A model generated the notes under the pieces. That model was not told the origin of the DNA and ran no database searches. It saw only the letters and a program-made list of their open reading frames with translations. Of a stretch of 64,000 nt of DNA, positions 3,001 to 64,000 are shown piece after piece. A program made the translations under genes and the position numbers. The stretch covers positions 22,196,001 through 22,260,000 of the forward strand of contig CM060733.1 of NCBI GenBank assembly GCA_030704615.1, in the 5' to 3' direction. Each line of letters opens with the position of its first letter. The first letter of the stretch is position 1. The stretch comes from Takakia lepidozioides. Taxonomy: Eukaryota > Plantae > Bryophyta.

Positions 3001-4030
3001 TTGAAAACTCCCTTCGCATCCTTGGCGTGAATCCACTTTGCTTTCCAACTTCCAGACCTTTCATCTTGATGCACTAGTTAAGCAAGAGACAGACAACCGC
3101 AGTGAAGGCCTTCATCCACTAGGCCCACACACAGAGAGAAGAGATATAAAAGTGATACTGTTTGGCTGCATGCCCTACTGTTGCATGCGTTCAAAGAGAT
3201 GCAGGGCCTCAATACCATGACCATGCTGGGCACATCCAGCAATGATCGCACTCCATGACACCACATTCCGTTCAGCCGTATTATCAAACACTTGATGTGC
3301 ATCGTTCATGCTCCCACATTTGGCATACATGTCAACAAGGGTATTCTCCAAAATGATATCAGATGCAATTTCAGCTTTAAGGATATCAGCATGAACCTCT
3401 TTGCCCCTTTCCAGGGCTCCTACGTTGGCACAACCATTGAGGACGCAAATGAATGTGACCTTGTTTGGTGTCACGCCTTCGTGTCGCAATTGCTCATAGA
3501 TTTTGAGAGCCTCCTCAACATGTCCATGCTTGACACAACCTGCCATCATCTTCGTCCATATATTAATGTCTCGTTCAGTCATTTGATGGAATACTTGGCG
3601 TGCGTCCACCAGGCTCCCGCACTTGATTTACATGTTGATAAACGTTGTTGAGTAGAAAGATGGTTGGCTTGGGTCCTCTTTGAATAATATGGGCATGCAC
3701 CTGCTTTCCCTCTTCTAGTTTTTTCAGGTTGATGCACTCCTGCAAGAGACAGATATAAGTATTTGAGTTGGCCACAATGCCTTGTTGGTGCAAAATGTGC
3801 AGCGCCTCTTTCAATTCTCCTGCCTTACACAGGGTCCTTACATACCCACAAGTGCCCGGAAAGCCCTTGTTGACTTCCTCTCTTGGTCCTCTTTCCAAAG
3901 CAGTGGTGATAGTGAAGGTCCTACCCCTCTTAGCAGTCAGATGTCCAGCAAACAATTGAGCCTGATCCAACCTTGCCAGCCTGCATGACTCCAAAGTACT
4001 GTTGTCGCCAATCTCTGACAAAATACTCAA
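1..4030 (-). pseudogene. PLS-class pentatricopeptide repeat (PPR) gene with E/E+ domain (organellar RNA-editing factor type); multiply frameshifted; runs off the left edge
   Basis: Minus-strand ORF pieces repeat the P-L-S triplet 'VILNTALVDMYAKCGSIEDAEGVFNNMAERDLVSWNAMLAGYAQQG..MEALETYEQM..EGVKPDHITFVCVCNACASLAALEKGKEVHG' about every 300 bp. Bases ~545->1 translate to 'VVWKALLGACRIHGNVE..TYVLLSNIYVAAGRWDD..GVRKEPGCFGIEVSNRVHTFVVDDKLHP..QMKEVGYV' (E, PG-box, E+). Many frameshifts and stops. A DYW domain may follow outside the window. Confidence 0.93.
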
Positions 4031-12451: not shown

Positions 12452-13291
12452 ATGCTGGGCACTTGGAACACGTCAGGATCGGATGTCGAGGTAAAAGCTG
12501 CTAGACTGGGTGGATCCTTGCAGCTTTCTTTGCAAGCATATGCAACATTCAGTGGCCTAGTTACTCCTGCACGAGCAAAGGTCGTTGAGCAGTTCCAACA
12601 TAAGTTTGCGACAAGTCTTCAGAGGATTTTGACAGAGACAATGTGTGTGTGTCTGAAAATACTTGATCTACACTATATGGCACCCAAAGAGTGCGGGTCT
12701 GTGGTTCGACAATGTATCAATGCTCCGTTGGAGACCGTGTGGTCGGTTCTGCGCAGGTTCGATCGCCCCCAGTCCTACAAGCACTTCGTTCAAGACTGTG
12801 AGATGGAAAATGTGGAAGGTTGCGGAGGGAGTGGTGAATTCAGATCTGATCCAAGCTCGTGGCCTGTGGGAGCGACTCGGCTGCTTCGGCTAAATTCTGG
12901 GTTCCCTGGCACAACAAGCAGAGAGCGTTTAGAGGTTCTTGATGATCAAGAGCATGTGATCACCTTCAAGGTCTTGAATGGGGACTTTCGCCTCCAGAAT
13001 TTCACATCCACTACATCATTGCACCGACACATTGGAAGTCCCGATTCTCCAGAGCAGACAATAGTTGTGGAGTCATTCAAGTCGGATATTCCTGAGGGAA
13101 ACACACAAGAGGACACAATTATTTTCGTTGAGATTCTACTCAAGACACAGCTGCACTCGTTGGCAGATATTGCAGAGCGGATGGCTCTGCAGAACGAAGG
13201 ATCCATGTGTATTGGGCAACCGTCATCAAAGCACGATCAAAATCTAAATTTCTTTGGGGAAGTGGCTGCATTTCTCTCTGAAGAACTGTGA
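12452..13291 (+). CDS. PYL: PYR/PYL/RCAR (ABA receptor)-like START-domain protein, divergent
   Basis: 'CGSVVRQCINAPLETVWSVLRRFDRPQSYKHFVQDC..VGATR..NSGFPGTTSRERLEVLDDQEHV..NGDFRLQNFTSTTSLH..TIVVESFKSDIPEGNTQEDTIIFVE..LHSLADIAERMA' is the PYL family pattern. The true start is uncertain (see findings). Confidence 0.88.
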   Translation: MLGTWNTSGSDVEVKAARLGGSLQLSLQAYATFSGLVTPARAKVVEQFQHKFATSLQRILTETMCVCLKILDLHYMAPKECGSVVRQCINAPLETVWSVLRRFDRPQSYKHFVQDCEMENVEGCGGSGEFRSDPSSWPVGATRLLRLNSGFPGTTSRERLEVLDDQEHVITFKVLNGDFRLQNFTSTTSLHRHIGSPDSPEQTIVVESFKSDIPEGNTQEDTIIFVEILLKTQLHSLADIAERMALQNEGSMCIGQPSSKHDQNLNFFGEVAAFLSEEL

Positions 13292-28540: not shown

Positions 28541-28764
28541 CACTACAACAAATAAGGGGGGTTTGTGACGTCAGTTGCGCTCCCACGCCCCGCGTGGCGC
28601 TAAGCCCGCGACGTCGAGCACGCGGCGTTTTTTTTCGAAGGGGGAAAGAGGGCCCTCGCTGCGACGGATTTTTTTCTTTGCGACGCCCCGACGTCACAAA
28701 AGCGTCACTGAGGGCGCCCCAACGCCTCTGCGACGTTAGGGCGTCGCAACAACATCACCATAAT

Positions 28765-28795
<31 letters not shown>

Positions 28796-29549
28796 GGCTT
28801 TGCGGCCCTCAACTTCACAAAAGTGTCGCTGGGGGCGCCCTGCGCTAGGACGGCCAATGCTGCGACGTCAGGGGGTCGCAATGTTGTTGTAGTCAGCTTA
28901 GGTTATCACAAGGACGTCGCTTGGGGTGTCTGGCGGTGGGGGGGGTGCAACAACAGCGACGACGCTGGGCACTAAGGTTGTGGAGGTTGCAACTCACAGG
29001 CGTCACAAGAGGGACCCCCTTAGAAAGAACTTGAAGAAAATTTTCATATGTATATATATATTTAGATTGCTTTTGTGATACATAGGTGTAGCGTAGGTGT
29101 GTTGGTTAGTCTGTAGTGTCTTAGAAATGTTATAACTTGGAGGTCTTAGGTTCAAGTATGTATTTGTATGATATATGTAGAACAATGAGCATATCGCCAT
29201 TAGATAGAACCGAAGTCAATGGTCAACAAGTTTTTGAAATTCAATTTTTTTTGGCCTAAATTCAAATGTACCCCCTTAAATTGTGACGTCCGGACATCGT
29301 ACTTTGCGAACCCCGGACGGTGCTAATTCTGCAATGTAGAATAGGTTTTTATTTATTTATTTTTTATTGGGACGCCAGGGTGTCGCAAATCGCGTCGGCG
29401 TCGCTAATCGCGGTTTCGTTTTTTTTGTGACGTTTTTTTGACGACGCCCGGGTGTCGCAAATTTGGTTCTCCCCCCTCCCCGAAAATGGTTGTTTTACGA
29501 CGTCGCAGCGTGGCCGCGGCGTCGAAAACCCCCCCATTTTCCTGTAGTG
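28541..29549. mobile_element. Non-autonomous CACTA (En/Spm) element
   Basis: Termini CACTACAACAAATAAGGGGGGTTT / AAAACCCCCCCATTTTCCTGTAGTG; 3-bp TSD ATT/ACT; numerous GCGACG/CGTCGC subterminal repeats. Confidence 0.85.
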
Positions 29550-29689: not shown

Positions 29690-30483
29690 GGGATGCCACA
29701 ACTTGGATGTTAGTTTCCACAAAAACGGACAAATCGATGAGGACATCGACTCCTCATTGGTAGGGGTGTGTGTCGCGGGCGGGGGGTCGGGACACAAGAA
29801 GGGCTGCCCGTGTGGTAGGGGCAGTGGCAGCAAATAGGAAAGGGGGCTGAAACACCCTTGAGTATCGAAGGCACTCAAAGAGGCGGTGGCACTCACTAGG
29901 TGGAGCCTTGCAAACCGGGTGGCGGTGGTGGGGCTCCACGAGGGGTGGTGGTAGTGTAGGGAGTCGTAGTGGGGGTGACATAGGACTCACCATAAGGCTG
30001 ATGCCTTTGTGGTGGGAGTCGTGGGGAGTCTCAAGAGGCTCATCACGGTCCATTGGGGCCGTTGTGGGTGGGCCAAGACTCACAGCGGCTCACCACAGGG
30101 ACGATCGAGGGTCTAAAGTGGTGGTGCACCAGATTTGGACGTGGCTACTTGTGGAACCCTCGCGGATACCTACAGAAGTATATATAGGGAGTAGTAACCC
30201 CGAGAACGGTGCAAGCCCGTTGGTGACCAAAAACTAGTGAGTAAGCGTGCGAGCCGAAAAGGACCAAGATGTGGGGAGCTATTCCGGACTGCCATCTACT
30301 AAAGGGAATTTTCACTGAGCCCAACAGGTCGAGGGTCGAGTGGGAGTGTGAGGGGGACCGTTATGCCCCGGTGAGCAGCCGAAGCTCCGAGTTGGCCCGG
30401 CGGCCAGTGTGGGAGTTAGGCGCGCGCATCAAAGCGAGTAACTATGACTCAAATGGGAGCTTACCGAAGTGAGGTGCGCAACA
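29690..30483 (-). mobile_element. LTR-like sequence, family B, copy 1
   Basis: Begins TGTTGCGCACCTC on the minus strand at 30483; reverse-complement homologue of 30935-31698. Confidence 0.65.
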
Positions 30484-30747
30484 CAAGGAATAAGGCAGAA
30501 AAATCTCACCGTAAAGAAAAAGCTTTAACCAAATGCCTCCTGGTTTGTCAATAGGAGCTACAATCTGGCATAGAGGGATCTCAAACTATGTTATTTTACA
30601 AAACGGCCAAAAGAAATTTAACATCATTTCTACTCTGTAAAAAACAACACTCCAGGATTAAAGCAGGAGTCAACGGCAGTAGTGACAGTTCCTTCGCCAT
30701 GAAGCCAACTATCAATAAGGACGTTCTGAAATACCCATATTCAGATC

Positions 30748-30934
30748 GAGGGGGGATGTTGTTACATCAGATTCATCTAGGGTATTGTAATTGACCCAGC
30801 GGTTAGTTTAGTTACATGCTAATGATGAAGCATGACCCCCCACTAGGACAAAAAGATGTACTGAAGTACTGGAGTTACAGAGCAGTAGTATTCATGGTGC
30901 ATACAACTTGAGATAGTGGGGAGGGGGAGCATAA
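30748..30934 (+). mobile_element. Polypurine tract plus first 178 bp of Copia LTR A
   Basis: GAGGGGGGA|TGTTGTTACATCAG.. is the reverse complement of 32346-32521. Confidence 0.75.
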
Positions 30935-31698
30935 TGTTGCGCACCTCATTTCGGTAAGCTTCCCTTTAAGTCATAGTTACTCGCTTCGATGCGCGCGCCT
31001 AACTCCCAAACTGGCCGTCGGGCCAACTCGTCGCTTCGGCAACTCACCGGGACATAACAGTCCCTCTTTGCTCTTCCACAAGACCCTCTCTCGATTTGGA
31101 CCTAGTGGAAATTCCCTTTGGTTGTTGGCAGTCCGGAACAGCTATCCACACCTTGGTCGCTTTCCGGCTCGCACGCTTACTCACTAGTTTTTGGACATCA
31201 ATGGGCTTGCACCGTTCTCGGGGTTATTCTTCCTTATATATACTTCTGTGACTGTCCGCGGGGGTTTTACAAACAACCCAGTCAGTTTATGGCGAACCAC
31301 CACGAAAACCCTCAATTCCCGGTGATGAGTCGCGGTGAGTCTTGGCCCACCTACCACGGCCCCATTGGACCGTGATGAGTCCCAAGACTCCCCACGACTC
31401 CTACCACAAGGTCGCCGCCCCCATGGTGAGTCCTATGCCATCCCCACTAAGTCCCATTAAGCTACCACCACCCCTTGTGGAACCACCCCCACCGCAACCC
31501 GGTGTGCAGGGCTCCACCTAGTGAGCGCCTCTGCCTCCTTGAGTGCCTTGGGCACTCACGGGTGCTTCGGCCCCCGTTCCTATCGTTGCCACTACCCCCA
31601 CCACAGGGGCAGCCCCTCTTGTGTCCCGACCCCCCGCCCTTAAGGCAAAGGGCCGCGACACACACCCCTACCAACAGGGAGTCGATGTCCTCATCGAA
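30935..31698 (+). mobile_element. LTR-like sequence, family B, copy 2 (truncated)
   Basis: Starts TGTTGCGCACCTC and interrupts LTR A; inverted relative to copy 1. Confidence 0.65.
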
Positions 31699-32521
31699 CA
31701 ACACGAACTCACAACGTCTGCTGCTCAAGAGGAGGATGGTCAATCTGAAGTTCGAAGAAGACACTGGATCCATGACCGAGTTCCTCACGAAGTTGAAGGA
31801 GCTATTGAACGAGCTAGCTACATGCATTGGAGAAATTGTAACATCTCTTTCAAGATTGCCCAACAGTGGTGAGGTTTGGTGATATTGGCCAGATGTGGGA
31901 TTATATTGTCTTTCACAAACAAAGCAATCATCGTTAGTGCCTTCTGTCTACGCACTTTGAAAGCAACCATCTCTTCGTCTGTGGCTGGGTTCAACGTTCT
32001 TCGTGTAGGCTCCACCACCTCCCAGAGATCTTCACATGTAAGTATGTTCTTGAGCTTGAAGCTCCAGACACTGTAGTTCTGGGCTCCTTCTAGCTTGGAA
32101 GCATCGCCAACTGAAAACTCTCTGAAACTCATGGTGGTTTGAGATTGTGGAGCTAAGCTTGACACAGATAGTCTACTTCTACTGTTCCCCTGCAGCTAAG
32201 TCTGACACAGTTTCCTCTAGAAACGAACTTCGCTACACTGATCACTCGGCTCTGATACCATATAGAGATAGGAACAGAAGCAGATTCTTTCATTCACGTA
32301 ACTCCCCAATATATACAGTGGCCCCACAACTTTGCTTTGTCTGTTTATGCTCCCCCCCCACTATCTAAAGTTGTATGCACCATGAATACTACTGCTCTGT
32401 AACTCCAGTACTTCAGTACATCTCTTTGTCCTAGTGGGGGGGTCATGCTTCATCATTAGCATATAACTAAACTAACCGGTGGGTCAATTACAATACCCTA
32501 GATGAATCTGATGTAACAACA
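31695..32521 (-). mobile_element. Ty1/copia 5' end: LTR (32521-32261), tRNA-Met PBS and gag, with the distal gag segment inverted
   Basis: PBS TGGTATCAGAGC on the minus strand at 32260-32249. Gag 'KLEGAQNYSVWSFKLKNILTCEDLWEVV..WAILKEM' is on minus; its continuation 'TNSQRLLLKRRMVNLKFEEDTGSMTEFLTKLKELLNELATCIGEIV' is on plus at 31695-31840. Confidence 0.85.
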
Positions 32522-36170: not shown

Positions 36171-39100
36171 TGTTGTAGAAATATACCTATAGCGCATATA
36201 CGGTATGAGGTTGGTAGTGTACCGACCTGTAGTTGGGTAGCTTCTTGGCATAGCAAATATAACGATGAGCTTAGATGAGCTTGTGCCGAGAGTTCTGATC
36301 ATTGTGCTTAGGTGGTGCAGTGGGTGTGAGAGAAAGTGAGCGATAGCAGTGTACACTTGGATTGTGAAGCTATGTGTATACTTTCACAATCAGTGTTAAT
36401 ACAATCTCTTTGCTATATCGTTGTGCATAATTCTTGGAGTCAATTGAGTGCACTACTTCAATAGGTTATGGGCCCACGAATCTCTTCCGGGTTAGTGCAT
36501 TGGTCTAAAAGCGGTATTGCATTGTTTTAGTTTCTTTCTCGTTTATGTTACGTTAGATATTGTGTCTACAGTATCTGTGTCAATCAAGCCGTTGAGCTTA
36601 AATACAGTGAAGTCATGTCGTCGCACTTGCAGTACACAGGATAGGGTTTCTTGTCCCCAGTATAGAGCTCTTGTGAGTAACTTTGCAACAGTGGGAGCAC
36701 TTGGGTTATGTCTTTTGGGTTTTAAGTTCAAAGTGTACGTCGTCAGTTGTTCCTTTTCTTTGCTTCACTTGTCGTCAAACGTAGCAAGCATGGTTGATCT
36801 TCGAGATCTGGGCAATATTAGGAGGTTCTCAGGACAAAATTTCCATATGTGGCAGTTTCAGATAAGAGCTCTCTTTCTTGGAAAGAAGCTGATGGACATA
36901 GTTGATGGCACCACAACGAAACCTTCCAATGATGCCGAGGGTTTAGCTGCATGGATCAAGAAAGATAATCAGGCAGTTTTTCTTTTGTGCCAAGCCGTGG
37001 AGGAGAAGATATCCAAATATATCATGGGATGCAAGACCTCCAAGGCGATCTGGGATAAATTGAGGGAGATACACGATCAGCATTCGCATGAAAGCATTCA
37101 CTATGTTCAACAGTGTTTCTTTGATATTACCATAGATGAAGGTGATAGCATTGCAGATTTCTTGGGTAAGATCGAGGAGGCGCGATGTGAGCTCACAAAT
37201 CTTGGAGATAATACATTCACTGACAACACAGTCATGGCCAAGATTTTAAGTCAGCTGCCAGCAGCATATGGATCGTTTCAATCATCACGGGAAAACGTCC
37301 CTGCAGTTGAGCGAACGATAAGTATCATGACTGGGAGGCTGATCAGAGAAGAATCAAGAATGCGACCAAGAAAGCAGAGCCAATGGCAAAAGTGCAAGTG
37401 TAACCGCATATGCAGCATCGTTCAAAGGAAAAGGTGGCTCACAGTTAGGAAAACCACCGCTCACGCTTGAGCAACGTGAACAGCGCAGGAAAGAAATAGT
37501 AGAGCGAAAGAAAACAACAGAATGCTGGAACTGTGGAGCCACTGGACATTGGAGCAGGGAATGTACAAAGCCAAGAAAGTCACTGGAAAATAAAGAAGTG
37601 CAAAAGACTGACACTGACTCATCGAAGGTGCATCGAGCCTTCATGGCTTCAGAGTCAGGACCCTGCTCACAACATTGGTACATGGACAGTTGCTGCTCAC
37701 AGCACATGTGCCAGAATCGAAGTTGGTTCTCAACTTACAGCGATATCTCAGAAGAGAAGCAAGTGGTGGAAGGGATCGGAGGTGTGGTGCTGTATACACA
37801 AGGGATAGGTGACAATATTTTCCACACCTGGGTTGATGGAAAACAAACCACAGGAATTCTCAAGGATGTTGTCCATGTGCCCAAGCTTGGCAGAAACTTA
37901 TTCTCTACCTCTCGAGGAGCCCAGAAAGGAATTGATACCCTACACACCAAATGAGGATGTTGTCTTATGGCTGATAGAGAAGTCGTGATGAAGGGAGTGG
38001 AAGAGTATGGAATCTATAGACTGTCAATGACGGTGGTATCCTCGTTGGAGTCCTCAAGAAACACCGCATTCTCCGCCAGTACAATTGGTGTACAGAGCAA
38101 AAAGGGCTGCACTCAGAGCTTGGACGTTTGGCACAAAAGACTTGGTCATGTCCATCATGGAATGATCAAGCATATGGAGAATAGAGACATGGTTGATGGA
38201 TTGTTTATTTCAGGGCGAAGGGAGGATCCACCCTTTTGCGTGGGCTGTGCTTATGGAAAAAGCCACAGATAGCCTTTTCCTTGGAATGAACACAGGGAGA
38301 AGACCACAGAGATTGGAGATTTGGTGCATTGTGACCTATGTGGCCCAATCAACGTGATCAGCATTGGTGGCACAAGATATTTCGCATTATTTAAGGATGA
38401 TCACAGCGGGTTTAGGGTCATTTTTTGCATCACACATAAAACAGCCACACTGGATTGTCTGCGTCGTTTCTATGGACAGATGCAACGTGAGACAGGCAGG
38501 ACCATCAAGATCCTCCGATCAGATAAAGGAACAAAATTTTGCAATGGAAAATTTGAAGAGTTCATGAGCCAGAAAGATATCAAGCATGAGCTCACTTGCG
38601 TTTACTCCCCTGAGCAGAATGGGGTGGCGGAAAGAGACAACCGTACTATTATTGAGTCTGTGTGCAACATGATACACGCTAGCAATGTTCACCCACAGTT
38701 TTGGGGGGAGGCTGCGCACACTGCAGTGTATTTGCTCAATCAAACCGGAAGCCATTTGCTGGACAACGTCACACCATACCAGCTCTGGTACGGCGTCAAG
38801 CCCTCTATTGCTCATGTGCGAGTTTTTGGCTCCAGTGCATATGTTCACATACTTTCTGAGCTCAGGAAGAAGTTGGACCAGAAAAGCAAATATTGCATCT
38901 TGATGGGTTACAGTGAGACAAGCAAAGCTTATCGTTTGTGGGATAATGAGTCCCGTCGCATTATTGAAAGCCGTGATGTGCTATTTGATGAGCTTAGTCA
39001 TGAGAGTGGCTCATCTGGAGAGGCCCCATCTAACAGCTCTTATGTCTGTTTGAGCGGCATTTTATTTGATCCACAGGCGCCAGTACCATTGGGACCAGTG

Positions 39101-40235
39101 GGAGGTGCTGATATTGATCCATTGCCCCATGTGCTTCAACCAGTGGGAGACATCATGGCTAGCAGCCCCGAACTACTCACTCCTCTCGAGCTCACCCACT
39201 TTGGAGACGACGAGTGTGACCAGCAGAAGGTGACAGACCCCACAGGTACTAGAGTTTTGAATGAGCAACAAGCTTTTGCTTCTTGGGATGACACAAGTGG
39301 CGATCCCTCCAGTAGCCTTCCAGAATTTTTGGTGTCAGAACCCGCACACCCTGGTGGCTCGTCCAGCCACGTTGAGCCTCACATGCAGCCCATGCAACTC
39401 GAAAGTCACGTATTTCCTGAGGAACGCGCCACTCGATCTAGGCATCCCCCGGAACGCTATGGCAATTGGGTTGTCCCGATTGGACATGGTAGCTACACTT
39501 GCAATGTTGCCACCACCCAACTACCTACTGGATACTTGCCAGTCGAACCCCTGACGACTGATGCAGCCCTCAAGTCTCCGGAACGCCAGCAATGGATCGA
39601 AGCAATGCAAGAAGAATATGATTCATTAATAGAAAATGGAACTTGGCTCTTGCAAGATTTGCCAACAGGAAGAAAGGTTGTGTGTTCCAAATGGGTCTAT
39701 AAGGTCAAGCTTGCAGCTGATGGAAGCGTGGCCCGTTTTAAGGCTCGTTTCGTCGCAAAGGGGTTCACCCAAAAAGAAGGTTTGGACTACACTGAAACTT
39801 TCAGCCCAGTGGCCAAGTTTGATTTGATTCGCACCATTCTCTCTATAGCTGCAGCAGAAGACATGGAGATCACTCAATTTGACGTACGAACAACCTTTCT
39901 GTATGGCGAAATTGATGAGGAGATATACATCCCGAGTGGGAGTGTTGTAGAAATATACCTATAGCGCATATACGGTATGAGGTTGGTAGTGTACCGACCT
40001 GTAGTTGGGTAGCTTCTTGGCATAGCAAAGATAACGATGAGCTTAGCTGAGCTCGTGCTGAGAGTTCTGATCACTGTGCTTAGGTGGTGCAATGGGTGTG
40101 AGAGAAAATGAGCGATAGCAGTGTACACTTGGATTGTGAAGCTATGTGTATACTTTCACAATCAGTGTTAATACAATCTCTTTGCTATATCGTTGTGCAT
40201 AATTCTTGGAGTCAATTGAGTGCACTACTTCACCA
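36171..40235 (+). mobile_element. Ty1/copia LTR retrotransposon, internally deleted (most of RT and all of RNase H missing)
   Basis: 293-bp LTRs at 36171-36463 and 39943-40235 (about 9 differences by eye); 5-bp TSD CATCA (36166-36170, 40236-40240); PBS GGTTATGGGCCCA at 36464; PPT GAGTGGGAG at 39934-39942. Confidence 0.96.
36790..39930 (+). pseudogene. Copia gag-pol (gag, zinc knuckle, protease, integrase, RT N-terminus); frameshift and stops
   Basis: 'FSGQNFHMWQFQI', 'CWNCGATGHWSREC', 'WYMDSCCSQHM', 'WHKRLGH..CVGCAYGK', 'VHCDLCGP..LRSDKG..NGVAERDNR', 'FKARFVAKGFTQKEGLDYTETFSPV..QFDVRTTFLYGEIDEEIY', then directly the PPT. Confidence 0.93.
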
Positions 40236-47742: not shown

Positions 47743-50700
47743 ATGGCATCTGAGCGGTACCAGGAAGTAAGAGACCAGTGTGCCGCGGGCCCTGATGTGA
47801 CCCTTCGATTGAGTAACTTGGACCCCACAGTTTCATCATCTGACAGCGATCTTTCAAGCTCTAAGAACTTGGGAAGCCCCAGTGCAGCAGATGAAGACAT
47901 CAACCCTCCTGCTGAAGTGGGCCGGTATTGGATTCCCACAAGTGGGAACCCAGAGGTTTCATCAATGGAGAGGAAAACAGCGTTGCTGGGTATCACAGAG
48001 TCTAAGGCAGGGGCGGTGTCAACAGGTGGGTCTGTTGATCCAAACCTCAAACTGGAGCCTTACAGTGATCAGGAGCGTAGCAGGTTGATGAGCTTACTAG
48101 TGGTACCCAGCACTATCAATTTGCAAACTACGGTGCCAAATTCTCCAAGTAGAGCTACGGACAGCGGGGAATTGGCACGCATGGCAGCTGAAGAACGGGA
48201 GTGTTCCAGTGTTGACCCGCGTATCTATGATGCACTTCCGAGAGAAGGCAGCCATACATTGCGTGTGAGAGGTACTTCCTACCCAAGGGTAGTGAAATAT
48301 AGCTGGAAATTTTAATTAATGTTCACCTTCTATGATTCTGTGCATCTCGTTCTCTAGCTGGTTTTGACGGGCTTAGTTTGGGCTATCCAATGTTGAACGC
48401 CTCAGCATTGCTATGAGGACCACAGGGATTGAATCTGCCTGAAGATCTTTCCTCAGTCAGCTGGTAGCAGTGAAATTTTGTAGCCGAGTAGCCGAGCTAC
48501 ATTTTCATGCGAGCTGACCTCAGTCACCAATTAAGAGTCCTATATCACATTCATGATCATGATCTAGTTAAAACTTCACAGTTTGATGGACAGTCCTTGG
48601 AAGTTATACCACATCTTCAGATGCTGTTCTTGTATGATACACAGGTCCTTGCTTAAAGGGAGAGCTCACGAGCGGGGGAGATTTGCAGTCCTGGCCAACA
48701 GGAGCATGGGATCTAGTCAGGCGAGGGAGTCTGGAGCGCACCACCAGTGGGCCTAGCCTCTCAGGCTCAGGAGACTCAGACAACGGGGATGATCGAGGGC
48801 GAGAACCCAGCAGCAGTAAACTCCCTTCCTCCCAGTTTCGGGGAGTAGTGCCTCAGTCCAATGGACGGTGGGGTGCTCAGATCTATGAAAAACACCAACG
48901 TATTTGGCTGGGAACCTTCAACACTGAAGAGGAGGCTGCGTGCGCTTACGATAGGGCTGCAATCAAGTTCCGAGGGCGTGATGCAATGACGAACTTTCGA
49001 CCTGTCCAGGACAACGATTTTGAGGCAGAATTTCTTCGTAAGTACAGCAAGGTGCAAATAGTAGAGATGTTGAGGCGACATACATACGATGAAGAGCTTC
49101 AGCAAAGCAGAACTGTAGCAAACACGGATGCAAGGCATGATGCCGTCGCAGCACATCGGGGGGCCCTTGACACCCGCACAACTGCAACCCCTGGGATTGG
49201 GAACGCAGCTGGTTCTTCCACTGTGGTATCAAACCGATGCATAGGCGATGCCACCAACAACATTCCCAGTTTACCAAGTTCTAGTGGAAGCGGACCCGTT
49301 CGAGAACATCTATTTGATAAGGCGGTTACGCCCAGTGATGTGGGGAAACTGAACAGATTAGTTATTCCAAAGCAGCATGCTGAACGGTGTTTTCCTCTTG
49401 ATCTGTCCGCGGCCACACCCGGGCAGACCCTCTCATTTGAAGATGTCTCAGGAAAGCACTGGCGGTTTCGGTACTCTTACTGGAACAGCAGCCAGAGTTA
49501 TGTGCTCACCAAGGGATGGAGTAGGTTTGTAAAGGAGAAGAAACTTGACGCTGGGGATATTGTCTCTTTTGAGCGGGGACCTAACCAGGAACTGTACATT
49601 GGTTTTAGGCGGAAGCAACCAGCACCCGGAAGCATTTCGGCCTCTGAGAGACCTCCATTCAGAGGTGCATGGACGGGACAACCTTGTAACGGTGCTTACA
49701 TGCTTTCAAAGACGGGCTCACCTTTCAATCTTTCAAGCTGGCAAACCTTCAATTTTTCCTCGCAACAAAACCTGCCAAGCCTTCCCTCAAGTCTACAGCC
49801 GGCTTTAGACAGGATGCTCTACGGAAATATGTATAACACGATATTTCAGCCATCTTTGGGAGCATCCTCGGTCATCCCAGGGCTTGTAAACCCAGAATTA
49901 ACTGCCTCCAAGGATCTGCCGTCCTCACTAACTTCCCGCTTAGGAGTAAGTCCCACTGCTCACCAGACTTTGCGGTTGCAAGGTGTGACAACAGAAGATT
50001 ATCTGGGGGCTATTGAGCTCGGGCTAGGACGACCAGGGAGGCCCGGAACAGAGGGAGGGATAATTCGAGACCGAGCCGTGGGCTCCAGCAGCAGAGACGC
50101 TCCAAGAAATGAAGAAGCTCCCACCACCAACAGTGGCACACGGCTGTTTGGAGTAGATCTCGAACGACCAGCTTCCACTCCCATCCAAATCTCTCAACCG
50201 CCTGGAACGAGTTCTGTGCCTGGTGTGCCATCAGCATTGACCGAGGTGTATGCCCCTTCATATGGGGGCCTTTCTCCTTCTGCCCATTCTCAAGCATATG
50301 TGCAGTTTGCAAGGTCGGTTCCAACAGCTGCCCAACCATCTCTACTGGCCAGGGACTTGTCTCCGTCACGGCTTAGCCAACAATATCAACACAGTCCCAG
50401 TCTGTTGAGTACCTTTGAGTTGCTTCGAACCAAACAGCAAACTCATCAGCAGGCAGAGTCAGGAGTGGGTTCCCAAATTGGCTTGTATGGAAGCACTACT
50501 AGCTCTCATAGTCTTGATTCTTCACAACTCACAAAGAATTCACTAGAGGCATGGAAAGGTAGGGAAGAGCTTCAAGCAAAATGCTGCCACGAAAACATGG
50601 CCTCAGCGTCGGACCCCCACTCAAGTAGGTCAATCCCAGTAGAGAACAGGAAACGGAAGGTTCCAGGGATTCTAGAAAATCTAAAATTGAAATCAGATCT

Positions 50701-51334
50701 GGGGGGAAACCGAGATGACGTGACCGACACATCCCTTAGTCTGGCTCATGCGGATTCTCTTCAAGGTCCTCAAGACACTAGTTGTCTGCAGCCATGGACG
50801 AGCAACCAAGAAGGAGGCCCCTTGGTTGGGAATCCCCTCGAAAGCTCTGGTGTAGAGCAAATGCCCAAAAGACATTGCTCTCCTGTTCGTGCCCCAGTAC
50901 AGCGCCAAGGTAGTGCGCAGTTGGAGGGTTCCTCTTTGCACCAAATTGGGGTACAGCAGATTATGTTGGGCCAAGGTGTGGGACATGAAGATCAGCCTTC
51001 TTCCAGCTCAAGTGGAGCACAAAGAGAGGTTCAAACCTCCAGAGGAGCAGCTTCAGATTCAAGCTCAAAGGAAGCACATGTCCATTTTAAGAGCCCTATT
51101 GTGAAACCAGGAGTTCAGAGGCTCATCAAATGTAGCATGGAGGGGCAAGAAAATTCAATCTCGATTTCAGTTGGGCAGTTTAATTCAACAAAGGAGCTTA
51201 AATCAGAGCTGCTCCACCTCACTAAAGGAAGCGACGTTGTCTACAAGGACGAAGAGGGGGACATGGTGTTGCTCGACAACCAAGGATGGGACTTCTTCAC
51301 AAATTCGGTTCAAGAGATGCTGATCCGAAGGTGA
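47743..51334 (+). CDS. RAV: RAV-family transcription factor (AP2 + B3 + RLFGV repression motif + C-terminal PB1); exons 47743-48271 and 48645-51334, ~1072 aa
   Basis: AP2 '[31 protein letters not shown]' (~48830-49005); B3 '[46 protein letters not shown]' (~49303-49615); 'TRLFGVDL'; PB1 '[29 protein letters not shown]'. A GT-AG intron at 48272-48644 (phase 1) joins the two ORFs in frame. Confidence 0.93.
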
Positions 51335-58989: not shown

Positions 58990-59678
58990 TTGGAAGAAAT
59001 TCATAAAGAAGTGGCTGGAGGTCATTTTGGAGAGGAGACTACCAGTAGAAAAATATTACTTGTAGGATACTGGTGGCCTACTTTGTTCAAATATGTGCAC
59101 AAGTATTGCAAGAGTTGTGATGAGTGCTAGAGGCTAGGACCTTTGCAAAGATCTGGGAAGATGGCTTTGCATCCGACGATGCCTACTGAACCATTTCAGA
59201 AATGGGAACTAGACTTTGTTGGACCAATAAACCCACCAGCCAAAAATACACAGAACAAGTATATAATCACGGCCACTGATTATACTACAAAGTGGGTGGA
59301 AGCTAAGGCTCTGAGGGACAACACAGCTAAGATTCATGTATGAGAACATACTTACAAGATTTGGCTGTCCCCTGGAATTTATCAGTGACCAGGGAAGTCA
59401 CTTCATTAATGAGACCATAGAACTATTGACTAAAGAGTTCATGATTGTGCACAGGAAGAGTACAACCTATTACCCACAGGGCAATGGGCAAGCAGAGGCC
59501 ACCAATAAAATATTATGTACTATCTTGGCTAAGATAGTCAATGCAAACAGAACGGATTGGGATACAAAGCTGTTGACAGTTTTGTGGTCATACAAGACTT
59601 CATATAAAGTCACCACCAAGTATACACCATCCCAATTAGTTTATGGTCTGGAAGCTTTACTTCCAGTAGAATTCTTAT
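58990..59678 (+). pseudogene. Ty3/gypsy integrase fragment
   Basis: 'LEEIHKEVAGGHFG..GYWWPTLFK..CKSCDEC*', '[24 protein letters not shown]', 'RFGCPLEFISDQGSHF..YYPQGNGQAEATNK..LVYGLEALLPVEF'; contains a stop and a frameshift. Confidence 0.92.
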
Positions 59679-60633
59679 TTTTGCGATGCCAGCCGCATCC
59701 CCACGCCCCGCGCGGCGCTTTTTTGCGATGCCCCGGCGTCGCAATCCCCCACTGCGACACCATTACGACGCCCAGCCGTCGTAAGGTGGCATGAAGGAGG
59801 AAAGAAGGCCCTCGTTGCGACGGATATTTTTTCTTACGATGCCCCGGCGTCGGAAATCCAAAAAATGACGTTGCGACGCCTCGACGTCGCAAAAGCGTCA
59901 CTAAGGGCGCCCCAGCGCCTCTGCGACGCCAGGGCGTCGCAACAGCATCATCACAGTGGGAGTTTTTTTTTTGGGCTTTGCGGCCCTCAACTTCACAAAA
60001 GCGTCGCTGGGGGCGCTCCGCGTTGGGAAGCCCAACGTTGCGACGTCAAGGGGTCGCAATGGCGTCGCCACAGGGGGTCGCAATGGTGTTGATGTCAGCT
60101 TAGGTCCACACAAGGATGTCGCTTGGGGCACCTGGCGGTGGGGGGTACAACAACGGTGACGATGCTGGGGCTGGGGCTGGGGCTGGGCACTAAGGCTGTG
60201 GAGGTTGCAACTCCCGGCGTCATAAGAGAGACCCCCTTAGAAGGAACTTGAAGGAACTTGAAAGAAATCTTTATATATATATATATATATATATAGTTTT
60301 TGTGATACATAGATGTAGCGTAGGTGTGTTGGTTAGTTTGTAGTGTCTTAGAAATGTTATAACGTACAGGTCTTAGGTTCAAGTATGCATTGCATGATAT
60401 ATATATAGAACAATGAACATATCGCCATTAGACAGAACCGGAGTCAATGGTCAACAAGTTTTTGAAATTCAAATTTGAAATTCAAAATTTCCCGCCTAAA
60501 TTCAAATGTACCCCCTTAAATTGTGACATCCGGGCGTCGCACTTTGCGACACCCGGACGGTGCTAATTCTGCATTGCAGAGTAGGGTTTTTTTTTTTTTT
60601 TTTTTGTCCGACGCTCGGGCGTCGCAAATCGCG
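59679..60633. mobile_element. Second copy of the CACTA non-autonomous element, termini missing
   Basis: Colinear with ~28570-29395 (GGGCGCCCC.ACGCCTCTGCGACG; TAGCGTAGGTGTGTTGGTTAG; GGTCAACAAGTTTTTGAAATTC) but no CACTA/TAGTG ends. Confidence 0.85.
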
Positions 60634-61462
60634 TGGCCCCCTTACCTCAAAAGTTCAAAGCAATACACCAAAGGCATAATGGCTTATTTTGAGTCCATGT
60701 ATTTCTATTTGCAAAGGTTACAGTCCATAGTTGTCATGTTCAAAAGTCCATAGCTCTTGGATATTTTAATTGATTGACAATTTGACGGTTGATATAGGTA
60801 GATATTGAAGTTAGAAATCCAGCATGGAAAATGTTTCTCAACATTATTGACTCTATTTAAAGCAATTCATGATATCCTGCACGACAATCACTGAAAACTG
60901 TGCCAGTTACGTCAATTTTGGTCCACCTTACCTTATATCTACCCTCGTTAAGAAATTTGGCATGCTTCACATTCCAGGTGTACGAAGTCTGGCATGCTTT
61001 TCCATTTGTGAGATGTTGAGCAGCTTTTACTCACCCATCCCTTTACTATCCGAGGTGGAAACCCAAAATAAAAGAGTTGGATATCACTAAGTACTCCTCC
61101 CGCTCAGAACAATCAGTCATGACCTACAACTACTGTATCATGGGGGTGTTTTCCTAATTCTATTCTTTCTTGCATTCATGTTTAGTAAGTTACCTTACTG
61201 CCATCAGATTGCTTCTGCAATCTACCATGTTCCATCTACTTAAGCATTCATTCCACAGCTTCACTCAGATCTCTCTACACAATGTGAATATGAAATATGA
61301 ATCATATTAATGCCTATCAAAGTATCAGGCCAAAGCCATGGTGTCTCTATTTTACCCTATAGTATATCTCTACAGCTTGCATGTATCAAGCATCGTCAGA
61401 TCGTGTCTCCTTCTCCACTATGCTCTCCATCCCTATGCTCCAGATCGTGCTTCCCTCCCTAA

Positions 61463-61906
61463 TGTTAGTCGTGATCCAAGAAGTGACCCCCTCCATGTAG
61501 CTACTCTGCCTATTCTACCTGCAAGCTATTCTAACCGCCTAAAGAACTAACTGTCATCCAAGACAGAACCCACGTTCCCTCTGCAGATGTCGTTCCCTCC
61601 CGTGATGATAGTTCTCTGTGAACGTTGTGACGGCCTGTGACCGTTGTGACGGCCTGTGACAGTTGTGACGGACTGTGTTGGCTGTGTTGGGCTGTGAAGG
61701 CTGTGTCGGGCTGTGATACCATGACAGGCTGTGTCGGGCTGTGTAAGCCTGTGACTGTTGACTATGTAAGCCTGTCTGCCACCCCTAAGGCCTGTGTTAG
61801 TCTGAGTCTACCACCCTTAAGTCTGCGCAAAATTAAGGGTATCCCACAAAACCCATAAAATTATATAAGTCCCAGACGACCCTCTAACATTATCCCTCCC
61901 CCTCTC
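61463..61906 (-). mobile_element. 3' LTR and polypurine tract of a probable Ty3/gypsy-type element extending to the right
   Basis: Minus strand reads GTGAGGGCACGACTTTTTGAGAGGGGGAGGGATAA|TGTTAGAG, with the LTR starting at 61889 and containing tandem CTGTGA/CTGTGT repeats. A candidate end ..CTAACA is at 61463, but the LTR may extend further left. Confidence 0.65.
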
Positions 61907-62279
61907 AAAAAGTCGTGCCCTCACGGTTTACTGCTTAGGATCAGCAAACCTTTGTGAACGAACACCCTTTTGCTAGTGAGAGTCCCTCAAAGGGCTCTGT
62001 GTATGAGCCCGAGCCGTGTCTTTGGCTAGTGGGGATGATTGTCGACTAGATGGAGCTGACTGCCCTGCCTTTGGCTGATAAGTAGACAATTTCTCAGGCA
62101 TAGGAGATCCCCGTGAGGTTTACTATTTCATGAGCGCATGAGCCCATGAGCCTATGAGCCTATGAGCTCATGAGCGGGCATCCGCGGAATTGGAATTTTC
62201 CTGCCTTTATTGACGGTGTTATGTCCTCTTACCTCGGTAATAGGGTCTGTTTCTCCTGGTCCAGGATGCGGAATGAGGA

Positions 62280-62560
62280 ATTTCGGCGCCGTTATTCCCA
62301 AGAGCAGTGTGCTAAAATGGTGTTTTGAAGACATCCACCGGGGTATTTCGGCACCGAAATTACCTCTTAAAATGTGATATAGTGCGGTATTTAAAGGCGC
62401 AGAACGGGCTATTTCGGCGCCGAAATACCCAAGTGGAATGTGGTGAAGTGCCTTGTGTTGAAGGCTTCCATCGCGATATTTTGGTGCAGTAATTCATCCG
62501 TGGAATTTTTGAGGCCCATATAACGAAGGCGGCAAACTGGGCTATTTCGGCGCGCCAAAT
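62280..62560. repeat. Five ~66-bp units, each carrying an ATTTCGGCGCCGAAAT-like palindrome
   Basis: Copies at 62280, 62345, 62411 (perfect 18-bp TATTTCGGCGCCGAAATA at 62410-62427), 62478 and 62544. Confidence 0.8.
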
Positions 62561-63119
62561 TTCCCAATAGGAATGTTAGAAACGGCAGTGGTTTTCATGG
62601 CTTCAAGTTCCGGCTCGATGGTTGCTGGCATAAATTACTTGTAGGGTTCTTCACTGAGTTTGCGTCTCTTCTGCTTTTATTATAGTTTTGGTTGGCGGAA
62701 GAAAATGTAGGGAATGGACAGCAGTCTGAACACAATGATTTTTAAATCGTCAATATTTTCATTAAGTGTTGTCAGAACTGTACAACAAAAGGATCCAAAT
62801 GAGACTTTGCTATGGTGAGGATCCGCTATCACTGTCCGATGCATCCCCGGCCTCATGCAGGATGGCTGCCTTCCACCTGCCTCCGAACCTGCACTGCCGC
62901 TACCGCTGTTACTCTGAGAAGCCCTCCCCTCAAAAATACCATCCTCACCAGCGGAACTGTCCACCTGGGTGCGGAAGTGTCCTCAACATTCCCTCGCTCT
63001 CGGACGCGGATTCTATTACGAACTTCCCTACTCTGCCTTTCACAATTCTATGTTTGGCCTCACGCCTCATTATAATTCTCTGCTCATTCCCGTATGTCAA
63101 TTGCTCTAACCGAGTAGGC

Positions 63120-64000
63120 CTATCCTCCCTCCTGATGGCTTCTTGGCAGCCGTGTCTGCATAGGCTGGTAGAAAAAAGGGCTTCTGGGGACTCGCGAGAA
63201 ACGATTTTCTGGCAAAGAATGGCCGATGCATGCGACTGTCTCCTCCTCTGCAACAGGGTCCGATTCGGGCAAGTCTCCCAGCTTCTCCTCGTCGGACGAC
63301 TCTGCAAGGCTGAGTGTACGCACAAACATAGAATGAAGTACATAGAGAATTCAAACAGGGAATCATCGGCAGGTTGCATGGTCCCTACAACCGAAACCAA
63401 TACACTTACTATGGTGCAACTCACTCGAAGACAGGCATTGGGGGAAGCGGCTTCGGGCGCCCCTGCATCGAACGAATTTCCGGACTTCCTCCTCTCATCT
63501 TCCTCCTCTCTTCCACGTCCTCTTCTGCGTTTTTGGGATCCTCAGTCGGAGGCAGACGCTGAAGGCCCGCCAAATTGTAATCGTACAAGGCCGTATACCC
63601 CTCAAATGAGAACACAAATCGGTTCGACATCCTTCCCGCCCACATACAGGCACCTGCGAATTCATACGACACAACCACAGCCAAACTCAAGAATGAGTCG
63701 CTTCCTCGCACAAGCAAACATACAGAAACGGAAATGGTGTCAATTTCGGTGCCGCATTCAATTAACGTTCTCACCTGTATTTGCAGTGACGTCAAGGACC
63801 CTGCCTTCAACATCCGTACACGTTTCCATGAGCGTCTGGATGAATGCAGGACTCCTGGTCCTGCCATACCTCCATGGCTTGCCCGACAAATCACAAAGAA
63901 TGTCCTTCTCTCCCACATGGTTGAACAGGACGTTATACTCCAGTGGATCAACTGTGGAATCAACAAGTCTTCCTGCTTCACGTAATTTGAATTTCGAATG
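63120..64000 (-). CDS. 3' exons of a spliced gene encoding a beta-class DNA amino-methyltransferase-like (N6_N4_Mtase) SAM-binding region; partial at the window edge
   Basis: Exons 64000-63775, 63653-63425 and 63309-63120, joined by GTGAG..CAG introns (121 and 115 nt), give 'GKPWRYGRTRSPAFIQTLMETCTDVEGRVLDVTANTG|ACMWAGRMSNRFVFSFEGYTALYDYNL..' followed by an acidic tail. This matches KP..L...LI...T..GD.VLDPF.GSGTT..AA....R..IG.E. Confidence 0.7.

What the first reader, a model, noticed from the sequence alone, without database searches (positions are those of the whole stretch)
61463..64000. Intron-containing DNA amino-methyltransferase-like gene apparently carried in the 3' region of an LTR retrotransposon
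Seen: the ORF track misses this gene because the key motif is split by an intron. The open frame 64000->63775 ends 'SPAFIQTLMETCTDVEGRVLDVTANT-G' at a GTGAG donor, and splicing to the CAG at 63654 continues in frame with 'ACMWAGRMSNRFVFSFEGY'. Downstream on the same strand lie a palindrome array, a polypurine tract and an LTR start. Established: beta-class N4-cytosine/N6-adenine methyltransferases (Pfam N6_N4_Mtase) end with KP..L..LI...S..GD.VLDPF.GSGTT..AA...GR..IG.E; they are mainly prokaryotic, with eukaryotic 4mC enzymes known from bdelloid rotifers and Marchantia. Inference: a plant retroelement carries its own spliced amino-MTase-like accessory gene in the extra-ORF position, perhaps to mark its own DNA or resist silencing. 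Sense-strand introns in a retroelement would also imply regulated splicing. The catalytic motif IV (DPPY/SPPY) would lie beyond the window, so activity cannot be judged, and motif I is atypical (DVTANTG).
Basis: partly seen in the sequence, partly recalled or inferred. Interest (0 to 1): 0.88.

Follow-up and report, generated by a model that had tools for sequence, protein, structure and literature searches.

The report
Spliced methyltransferase-like plant gene, no LTR
The window edge holds the last exons of a real, intron-containing plant gene whose tail descends from the cofactor-binding half of a bacterial-type DNA amino-methyltransferase, but the supposed retrotransposon LTR next to it is a small cut-and-paste transposon, so nothing shows the gene is retroelement cargo.

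Summary
The sequence observation is right. The frame, the GT/AG sites and the in-frame continuation across a 121-nt intron are as described, and the palindrome array is real.

The methyltransferase (MTase) resemblance is also real. Profiles of the two exons, searched separately, match adjacent segments of a profile built from seven genuine beta-class N6/N4 MTases. These segments are the helix before motif I, motif I itself and the GR-FIG-E strand. Both matches beat all 300 column shuffles, and they meet at the exon junction.

The similarity is limited. No curated family model is reached, the glycine loop of motif I is degenerate, and no catalytic (D/S)PPY half was found in fuller homologues.

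The retroelement reading fails. The "polypurine tract plus LTR start" is a 433-bp element with perfect 9-bp terminal inverted repeats and a perfect 8-bp target-site duplication, which is the hAT-type MITE pattern.

Six homologues exist among 1.8 billion cluster representatives. All are unnamed fragments on environmental contigs. Those with enough DNA show a gene of about ten coding blocks with its own start codon and no pol within about 1 kb upstream, or 0.2 kb in one, with the motif-I intron at the same codon and phase in five loci.

Best reading: a rare, unannotated, spliced gene family with a probably non-catalytic MTase-derived module. Whether it is a host gene or a mobile one is open.

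The parts
63775..64000 (-). Coding exon, cut by the window edge. It holds the helix equivalent to the KP..L..LI..S helix and the strand equivalent to VLDPF of beta-class MTases (SPAFIQTLMETC at 63853-63818, RVLDVTANT at 63802-63776). It ends in phase 1.
   Evidence: Open frame. Six homologues at 34-49% identity all end at this point. hhalign against 7 real MTases gives P=7.5e-4 and score 28.6, versus 12.3+-2.5 for shuffled columns, 0 of 300 reaching it.
63654..63774 (-). Intron of 121 nt (GTGAGA...CAG) that splits motif I. It contains a 2-mismatch match to the palindrome pattern at 63744-63757.
   Evidence: Same codon and phase 1 in L001, L006, L014 and L003.
63425..63653 (-). Coding exon: the remainder of motif I plus the GR-FIG-E-like strand (RFVFSFEGY at 63621-63595), then a charged, proline-rich tail. 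It ends in phase 2 before GTGAGT.
   Evidence: Homologous exons in L001, L002, L003 and L014. hhalign P=0.01, score 18.9 versus 10.1+-2.0, 0 of 300.
63300..63424 (-). Second intron. The donor is GTGAGT. The acceptor is ambiguous: AG at 63311-10, 63303-02 or 63301-00.
62945..63299 (-). Probable last coding exon, including the stop at 62947-62945, in the frame that carries the family's C-terminal motif (KFVIESASESE at 63025-62993).
   Evidence: The motif K.F[VLM][DI].[ES]AS recurs at the C-termini in L001, L002 and L014. Coordinates. The model is unverified without RNA.
62281..62561 (.). Array of four 16-nt palindromes with core CGGYGCCG, at spacings of 65, 66 and 133 nt. It begins about 390 nt downstream of the stop codon.
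   Evidence: Comparable arrays of different palindromes lie beside the homologous genes.
62128..62173 (.). Short run of GCTCATG-type units forming an imperfect palindrome.
   Evidence: inverted repeat I3.
61460..61892 (.). 433-bp non-autonomous TIR element (hAT-type by TSD length) with an internal 19-nt tandem array at 61616-61729.
   Evidence: Perfect 9-bp TIRs. Tandem array.
61893..61900 (.). Target-site duplication GGGAGGGA, copy 1.
61452..61459 (.). Target-site duplication GGGAGGGA, copy 2.

Best explanation
Window 64000-62945 (minus strand) holds the 3' exons of a spliced nuclear gene from a rare, unannotated plant family.

- What it encodes: a large protein, about ten coding blocks in fuller homologues. 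Its C-terminal part descends from the AdoMet-binding half of a beta-class N4/N6 DNA methyltransferase (the helix before motif I, motif I, motif II).
- Why activity is doubtful: the glycine loop of motif I has decayed and no catalytic (D/S)PPY half is detectable in fuller homologues. The module most likely no longer methylates. It probably serves as a binding module, for example for AdoMet or DNA. That step is inference.
- Context: the gene is not shown to be cargo of an LTR retrotransposon. The neighbouring 'PPT + LTR' is a 433-bp hAT-type MITE that inserted into a purine-rich site about 1 kb downstream of the stop codon and duplicated 8 bp.
- Palindrome arrays: they lie beside the gene here and beside its homologues, with a different palindrome in each. 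They are candidate cis sites (promoter or terminal elements, or binding sites for the protein). That is also inference.
For: Shown:
- Frames and splice sites are as described.
- Six true homologues in 1.84 billion representatives all end at the same exon boundary.
- Homology extends over about ten collinear coding blocks in L001, L006, L002 and L014, with a conserved Met start in L001, L006 and L014 and a conserved C-terminal motif in L001, L002 and L014.
- The intron inside motif I sits at the same codon and in phase 1 in five loci.
- The exon-1 and exon-2 profiles hit adjacent segments of a profile of seven genuine MTases (template columns 201-229 and 229-253). Each exceeds all 300 column shuffles; adjacency arises by chance in 22 of 300.
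- A weak PF01555 hit falls at the expected profile positions, 148-188 of 221.
- The TIR + TSD structure is established.
- No pol or gag lies upstream of the start codon in L001 (1.5 kb), L014 (1.1 kb) or L006 (0.9 kb).
Against: - No curated model is reached. Pfam gives nothing for the window exons; the best hit is 12.2 bits against a cut-off of 26.7 for one homologue. NCBIfam and PADLOC give nothing.
- The single-exon fold was poor (pLDDT 56) and Foldseek found nothing.
- The upstream exons of the window copy lie beyond 64000, so a catalytic motif there cannot be excluded.
- The search for motif IV in homologues used raw ORF pieces, not a verified transcript.
- Several copies look damaged: L002 has a frameshift and L006 lacks the last exons. 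Paralogues at 93% identity lose homology about 170 nt after the stop codon. Both fit a mobile or decaying family as well as a host gene.
- The 3' gene model in the window is ambiguous, with three acceptors.
Confidence: 0.6

Rival explanations
1. One reading: an LTR retrotransposon carries this spliced MTase-like gene as an accessory ORF between pol and the PPT/3' LTR.
For: A purine run and a TG...CA-bounded segment lie downstream on the same strand. In L001 a gypsy gag-like ORF lies 0.9 kb downstream in the same orientation. Retroelements with DNA MTase domains do exist: alpha-class Dam in DIRS and some LTR elements (bioRxiv 10.64898/2026.05.21.726589).
Against: - The 'LTR' has 9-bp TIRs and an 8-bp TSD, so it is a DNA-transposon derivative.
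- No LTR pair is in the window.
- Homologues start with their own Met after 0.9-1.5 kb of non-coding DNA in L001, L014 and L006 (repeat arrays in L001 and L014), not after pol.
- About ten conserved introns are hard to keep through RNA-mediated copying.
- The preprint reports no DAM-LTR elements in Streptophyta and concerns a different MTase class.
Confidence: 0.04
2. The gene belongs to a different, undescribed mobile or selfish unit, DNA-transposon-like, whose ends carry arrays of short palindromes recognised by the encoded protein.
For: - Arrays of palindromes lie beside the gene in every locus with flanks, and the palindrome differs in each. Window core GGCGCC; L001 CCGCGG-type, 8 sites against 0.03 expected; L014 64-nt tandem array; L006 TTCTAGAA; L002.
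- L006 has 142-nt inverted repeats, 96% matched, flanking the gene.
- Diverged paralogues occur in one sample (L001 and L006), and 93% paralogues have a sharp homology end.
- Damaged copies exist, and the family is absent from annotated proteomes.
Against: - No transposase, integrase or RT domain is in any piece.
- No TSD or shared termini were identified.
- The arrays lie upstream in L001 and L014 but downstream in the window and L002.
- The L006 right arm runs into the contig end and may be an unrelated repeat.
- The arrays could simply be promoter or satellite-like repeats.
Confidence: 0.22
3. It is an active 4mC or 6mA DNA methyltransferase whose catalytic motif lies in exons beyond the window edge.
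For: The acidic residue ending the GR-FIG-E strand and the Asp of the VLD strand are kept. One homologue keeps a TGTG loop. Beta-class MTases do function in eukaryotes, in bdelloid N4CMT (PMC8885841) and Marchantia DN4MT1 (bioRxiv 10.1101/2021.02.12.428880).
Against: Those enzymes are described by their authors as carrying the N6_N4_MTase domain (PF01555) or clustering with prokaryotic N4 MTases and carrying TSPPY. This family does not reach the Pfam model. The FxGxG loop is lost in most members. No match to the catalytic half was found in L001 or L006 upstream pieces.
Confidence: 0.12
4. The MTase resemblance is chance, and the locus is a decaying pseudogene or non-functional ORF remnant.
For: No database model reaches significance. 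hhalign probabilities are low (25% and 4%). The 3' model is ambiguous.
Against: Two independent exon profiles hit adjacent template segments in the right order, each above all 300 shuffles. Exon-restricted conservation at 30-55% identity across five or more loci, with the intron position kept, implies selection on a protein.
Confidence: 0.06

Closest known systems
Beta-class (permuted) N6-adenine/N4-cytosine DNA methyltransferases, Pfam PF01555 (e.g. E. coli YhdJ and phage orphan MTases)
   Same: The C-terminal order matches: helix (KP..L..I..S), then strand VLD-x-x-x-G (motif I), then GR-x-F-x-G-x-E (motif II). The profile-profile match lands exactly on these columns.
   Different: The glycine loop FxGxG is replaced by T-x-x-T-G or similar. 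No (D/S)PPY half was found. The Pfam threshold is not reached. The family is eukaryotic with about ten coding blocks, embedded in a much longer protein whose other parts match nothing.
Eukaryotic beta-class enzymes: bdelloid N4CMT (PMC8885841) and Marchantia MpDN4MT1a/b (bioRxiv 10.1101/2021.02.12.428880)
   Same: Bacterial-type amino-MTase modules resident in eukaryotic genomes that have acquired introns.
   Different: Those keep a domain their authors identify as PF01555 or as clustering with prokaryotic N4 MTases, plus the TSPPY catalytic motif, and they methylate DNA. This family is far more diverged and shows no catalytic motif.
DAM-carrying retrotransposons (DIRS and DAM-LTR elements; bioRxiv 10.64898/2026.05.21.726589)
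   Same: The general idea of a mobile element carrying a prokaryote-derived DNA amino-MTase domain.
   Different: Those carry alpha-class Dam inside pol or next to RT or a tyrosine recombinase, and DAM-LTR elements are reported absent from Streptophyta. Here the class is beta-like, no RT, IN or YR is linked, and the LTR evidence is void.
hAT-superfamily MITEs (for the 433-bp element only)
   Same: Short perfect TIRs, an 8-bp target-site duplication, small size and no coding capacity.
   Different: No other copy is in the window and no transposase relative was identified. The superfamily is assigned from TSD length alone.
VANDAL (Mutator-like) VANC anti-silencing proteins with arrays of cognate short motifs (recalled from the literature, not tested here)
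   Same: An element-linked protein with rapidly diverging arrays of short DNA motifs in the non-coding parts of its own locus.
   Different: No sequence relationship was tested or expected. Binding of this protein to the palindromes is pure conjecture.

Membership tests
Beta-class N6_N4 DNA methyltransferase (PF01555) | Match to the family model above its gathering score | tested here: not met
   Window exons give no hit at E<=10. The best family member scores 12.2 bits, E=0.16-0.17, against a cut-off of 26.7.
Beta-class N6_N4 DNA methyltransferase (PF01555) | Collinear C-terminal block: pre-motif-I helix, motif I strand, motif II (GR.FIG.E) | tested here: met
   hhalign of the exon profiles against 7 genuine enzymes gives P=7.5e-4 and 0.01. 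The template segments 201-229 and 229-253 abut. Both scores are above all 300 column shuffles.
Beta-class N6_N4 DNA methyltransferase (PF01555) | Glycine-rich AdoMet loop FxGxG(T/S)T in motif I | tested here: not met
   The window reads D-V-T-A-N-T-G. Homologues read T-S-T-G, C-N-T-, V-E-T-; only L006 has T-G-T-G.
Beta-class N6_N4 DNA methyltransferase (PF01555) | Catalytic motif IV (D/S)PPY N-terminal to the AdoMet half | tested here: inconclusive
   For the window copy this lies beyond position 64000. In L001 and L006 upstream ORF pieces there is no match to the catalytic half, but the exon models are unverified.
LTR retrotransposon with accessory gene | 3' LTR (TG...CA) directly preceded by a polypurine tract, with a matching 5' LTR | tested here: not met
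   The segment is a TIR element with an 8-bp TSD. It has no second copy in the window. The 5' side beyond 64000 cannot be read.
LTR retrotransposon with accessory gene | gag-pol upstream of the gene in the same orientation, with the linkage kept in other copies | tested here: not met
   Not testable in the window itself. In L001, L014 and L006 the gene has its own Met preceded by 0.9-1.5 kb of non-coding DNA (repeat arrays in L001 and L014), with no RT, IN or gag domain.
DAM-TE (DIRS / DAM-LTR retroelements) | Alpha-class Dam domain (NPP-aromatic pocket) within or beside RT or tyrosine recombinase | tested here: not met
   No Pfam hit of that kind was found. The similarity is to the beta-class C-terminal arrangement. 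No RT or YR is in the loci.
hAT-type MITE (433-bp element) | Terminal inverted repeats flanked by an 8-bp target-site duplication | tested here: met
   The 9-bp TIRs and 8-bp TSD are both perfect. This is the only such case in 64 kb, with 0 in 20 shuffles.
hAT-type MITE (433-bp element) | Multiple dispersed copies; relation to an autonomous hAT element | not testable with these tools
   No other copy is in the window, and the source genome is not available.

The most novel reading that the evidence does not exclude
The family is a methyltransferase-derived, sequence-specific DNA-binding protein that recognises the short palindromes arrayed beside its own gene. These are type-II-site-like cores such as GGCGCC, CCGCGG, TCTAGA and CCATGG, a different one in each paralogue. 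Protein and sites would then form a self-recognising, possibly mobile or anti-silencing unit in land-plant genomes.
Probability: 0.1. Interest if true: 0.8.

Novelty: new variant of a known kind. Interest (0 to 1): 0.45.

Why it matters
Bacterial-type amino-methyltransferase modules are very rare in eukaryotic nuclear genes. The documented cases (bdelloid N4CMT, Marchantia DN4MT1) each opened a new chapter of eukaryotic DNA modification.

This is a second, much more diverged plant lineage of such a module. It has old introns and is absent from annotated proteomes. It is therefore a candidate pseudo-enzyme or DNA-binding derivative worth expressing and testing.

The result also removes a tempting false lead. 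There is no evidence here for a plant LTR retrotransposon carrying its own DNA methyltransferase. The case is a reminder that a purine run next to a TG...CA segment should be checked for TIRs and a target-site duplication before it is called a PPT plus LTR.

Tried and rejected
- Family and structure searches on single exons all returned nothing usable. This covers Pfam, NCBIfam and PADLOC scans of the window exons and of eight L001 pieces, and PDB sequence-profile searches with the exon-1 profile and with the N-terminal block. The one exception was a sub-threshold PF01555 hit.
- The word-index protein search with exon 1 found no candidate.
- The JGI metagenome scan with the exon-1 alignment failed twice. 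The first alignment was too diverse. The second gave 144 pattern matches, none confirmed.
- AlphaFold2 on the single large exon gave pLDDT 56. Foldseek against the PDB gave only noise.
- A ParB/DGQHR-like reading of the N-terminal WDGNHR block was a lead from memory. No tool supports it, and the H-R pair is not kept in L014 or L002. Dropped.
- A candidate motif IV ('SSHPY' in L001, 'SPVPY' in L006) was not supported by hhalign.
- The 27-nt inverted repeat 'flanking' L002 lies inside a coding exon and is chance.
- Extending the window failed. Ten window ORFs were looked up by exact sequence and none is in the collection.
- No second gene copy and no copy of the flanks was found elsewhere in the window.
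- No nucleotide similarity exists between the flanks of different loci.
- The joined (spliced) protein was never built, searched or folded. Every search was exon by exon and by reference.
- No contig looked human.
Full report
**1. Observation**

On the minus strand the frame starting at 64000 is open through 63776. GT follows at 63774-63773 and AG lies at 63655-63654. The junction codon is G+GT (Gly), and the next exon starts ACMWAGRMSNRFVFSFEGY. Exon 2 ends at 63425 before a consensus GTGAGT.

The window comes from a land plant. It also holds an AP2+B3 (RAV-like) ORF, a PYR/PYL-like ORF, PPR-like repeats, and copia and gypsy remnants.

**2. Is it a real gene?**

An exhaustive HMMER search of 1.84 billion cluster representatives with exon 1 gave 18 hits. 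Twelve are not family members: eleven match only short internal stretches (the two I read are C2H2 zinc-finger proteins) and one listed no aligned stretch.

Six are true relatives at 34-49% identity. All are short, unnamed ORF fragments from environmental assemblies, and all stop being similar at exactly the window's exon end.

Their contigs (L001-L006, L014) show that this exon is one of about ten collinear conserved coding blocks spread over 3.4-4.8 kb:
- a conserved Met start (L001 1519, L006 916, L014 1099);
- a homologue of exon 2;
- a shared C-terminal motif, K.F[VLM][DI].[ES]AS.

The intron that splits motif I sits after the same codon, in phase 1, with a GT donor, in the window, L001, L006, L014 and L003. 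L002 is off by one codon and also carries a frameshift.

Conservation is confined to the coding blocks. Introns and flanks do not align. This is therefore a protein-coding, spliced gene family under selection, with some decayed copies.

In the window the C-terminal motif lies at 63025-62993. It is in frame only if the acceptor AG at 63301-63300 is used, giving an exon start at 63299. RNA is needed to settle this.

**3. Is it methyltransferase-like?**

Curated libraries say nothing for the window exons. One homologue's exon gives a sub-threshold PF01555 hit: E=0.17, at profile positions 148-188 of 221.

I built a reference alignment of seven genuine beta-class enzymes, all taken by reference from annotated records: E. 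coli YhdJ and six phage MTases. I then compared the exon profiles with it, one exon at a time.
- The exon-1 profile aligns to template columns 201-229, which are YhdJ residues 198-226 (QKPEALL...VLDPFAGSF), with P=7.5e-4.
- The exon-2 profile aligns to columns 229-253, which are YhdJ residues 226-250 (the GR-FIG-E strand), with P=0.01.
- The two matches are in order and meet at the same template column, which is the exon junction.

As a control I shuffled the alignment columns 300 times:

| Profile | Observed score | Shuffled mean +- sd | Shuffled maximum |
|---|---|---|---|
| Exon 1 | 28.6 | 12.3 +- 2.5 | 25.2 |
| Exon 2 | 18.9 | 10.1 +- 2.0 | 17.1 |

Such adjacency arises by chance in 22 of 300 shuffle pairs.

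It stops there:
- The FxGxG loop is not conserved.
- Relaxed alignment adds nothing upstream with any confidence.
- ORF pieces upstream in L001 and L006 do not match the catalytic half.
- A fold of the single large exon was too poor to use.

That remains the decisive computation.

**4. Is it inside an LTR retrotransposon?**

No evidence remains for this. The supposed LTR (61893 down to 61463) is bounded by perfect 9-bp inverted repeats, TAATGTTAG...CTAACATTA (61892-61884 and 61468-61460). These are flanked by a perfect 8-bp direct repeat, GGGAGGGA (61900-61893 and 61459-61452). This is the only such arrangement in 64 kb, and none occurred in 20 shuffles.

That is the signature of a cut-and-paste element with an 8-bp target-site duplication, which is hAT-type. 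Here it is a 433-bp MITE with an internal 19-nt tandem array. The 'polypurine tract' is the purine-rich target site, half of it duplicated by the insertion.

Other points against the LTR reading:
- No second copy of the segment exists in the window.
- The window could not be extended.
- In three homologous loci the gene starts with its own Met after 0.9-1.5 kb of non-coding DNA (L002 begins inside the gene); no RT, integrase or gag lies upstream.
- L001 has a degenerate gypsy gag/integrase downstream, but that is an ordinary neighbour in TE-rich DNA.

**5. What else is there?**

Beside the gene lie arrays of short palindromes, and the palindrome differs in each locus:

| Locus | Palindrome or array | Position relative to the gene | Statistics |
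|---|---|---|---|
| Window | ATTTCGGCGCCGAAAT-type sites at spacings of 65, 66 and 133 nt, plus a looser match in intron 1 | Starts about 390 nt after the stop | 9 matches on both strands (2 at unrelated sites 5287 and 5373) vs 0.5 expected |
| L001 | Eight TCCGCGGYGCCGCGGA sites | Upstream of the start | 15 matches vs 0.03 expected |
| L014 | 64-nt tandem array carrying CCATGTGC...GCACATATGG | Upstream of the start | 4 matches, 3 of them in the array, vs 0.03 expected |
| L006 | TTCTAGAA repeats | After its last recognisable exon | 3 matches vs 0.18 expected |
| L002 | CCATGG/GGGAACATG-type repeats | Downstream | not tested |

Further observations:
- L006 is also flanked by 142-nt inverted repeats, 96% matched, one of which runs into the contig end.
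- L003 and L014 are 93% identical paralogues whose similarity ends about 170 nt after the stop codon.

These facts fit a gene with repeat-rich regulatory flanks. They fit equally a gene that is part of an undescribed mobile unit. I could not decide between the two.

**6. Mechanism and verdict**

Most likely (0.6) this is a spliced nuclear gene encoding a large protein whose C-terminal module is a decayed beta-class amino-MTase AdoMet-binding half. It probably acts as a binding module rather than as an enzyme.
- Shown: the gene, the conserved intron, the homology of the module, and the MITE.
- Inferred: loss of catalysis, and any link to the palindromes.

The LTR-cargo model is at about 0.04. 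An undescribed mobile unit is at about 0.22. An active enzyme with upstream catalytic exons is at about 0.12. Chance resemblance is at about 0.06.

**7. Comparison with known systems**

The module works like, and descends from, PF01555-type enzymes. It fails the membership tests that define an enzyme of that family: the model threshold and the glycine loop are not met, and motif IV was not found.

It differs from N4CMT and MpDN4MT1, which keep an intact catalytic domain. It also differs from the DAM-carrying DIRS/LTR elements, which have an alpha-class domain linked to RT or YR and of which the LTR class is reported absent from streptophytes.

I rate it a new variant of a known kind, of moderate interest (0.45). 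The striking claim, a plant retroelement with its own methyltransferase, does not survive. What remains is a genuine, rare, unannotated family with a bacterial-type MTase relic.

Noticed in passing
window 594-3623: About nine tandem copies of a ~300-nt unit (60-89% alike) that carry ORFs. A minus-strand ORF at 3575-4030 has weak PPR/TPR-like hits, so this is probably a repeat-protein gene or its remnant.
   Followed up: partly
window 48683-51334 (+): An 883-aa open frame with AP2 and B3 domains (RAV-like) and a weak C-terminal AUX/IAA (PB1-like) match, E=0.0024. That combination would be unusual. The first Met lies after the start of the AP2 domain, so an upstream exon is likely.
   Followed up: partly
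window 36171-40232: A short copia-type LTR retrotransposon with 290-nt LTRs 98% identical, containing gag (36517-37470) and integrase plus a partial RT (38321-39964). It is internally deleted but young.
   Followed up: partly
window 28678-29365 and 59871-60605: A dispersed repeat of about 700 nt at 87-94% identity. The second copy abuts a plus-strand gypsy integrase remnant at 58990-59794.
   Followed up: no
window 29834-32521: Nested inverted repeats (arms 63-144 nt, 79-98% complementary) forming a ~2.7-kb foldback structure.
   Followed up: no
window 12452-13291 (+): A 279-aa ORF with a Polyketide_cyc2 (PYR/PYL/START-like) domain, E=4e-11. It is longer than typical ABA receptors.
   Followed up: no
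L014 1468-1840 and 10153-10563; L002 1478-1928 and 3118-3530: The same unidentified repeat occurs within or near the homologous genes on two environmental contigs, in opposite orientations. This suggests the two contigs come from related genomes that share a TE family.
   Followed up: no
L001 6190-7413: A gypsy-type gag (weak PEG10_N-capsid hit) is followed directly by integrase-like pieces. This is a rearranged or deleted element just downstream of the homologous gene.
   Followed up: partly
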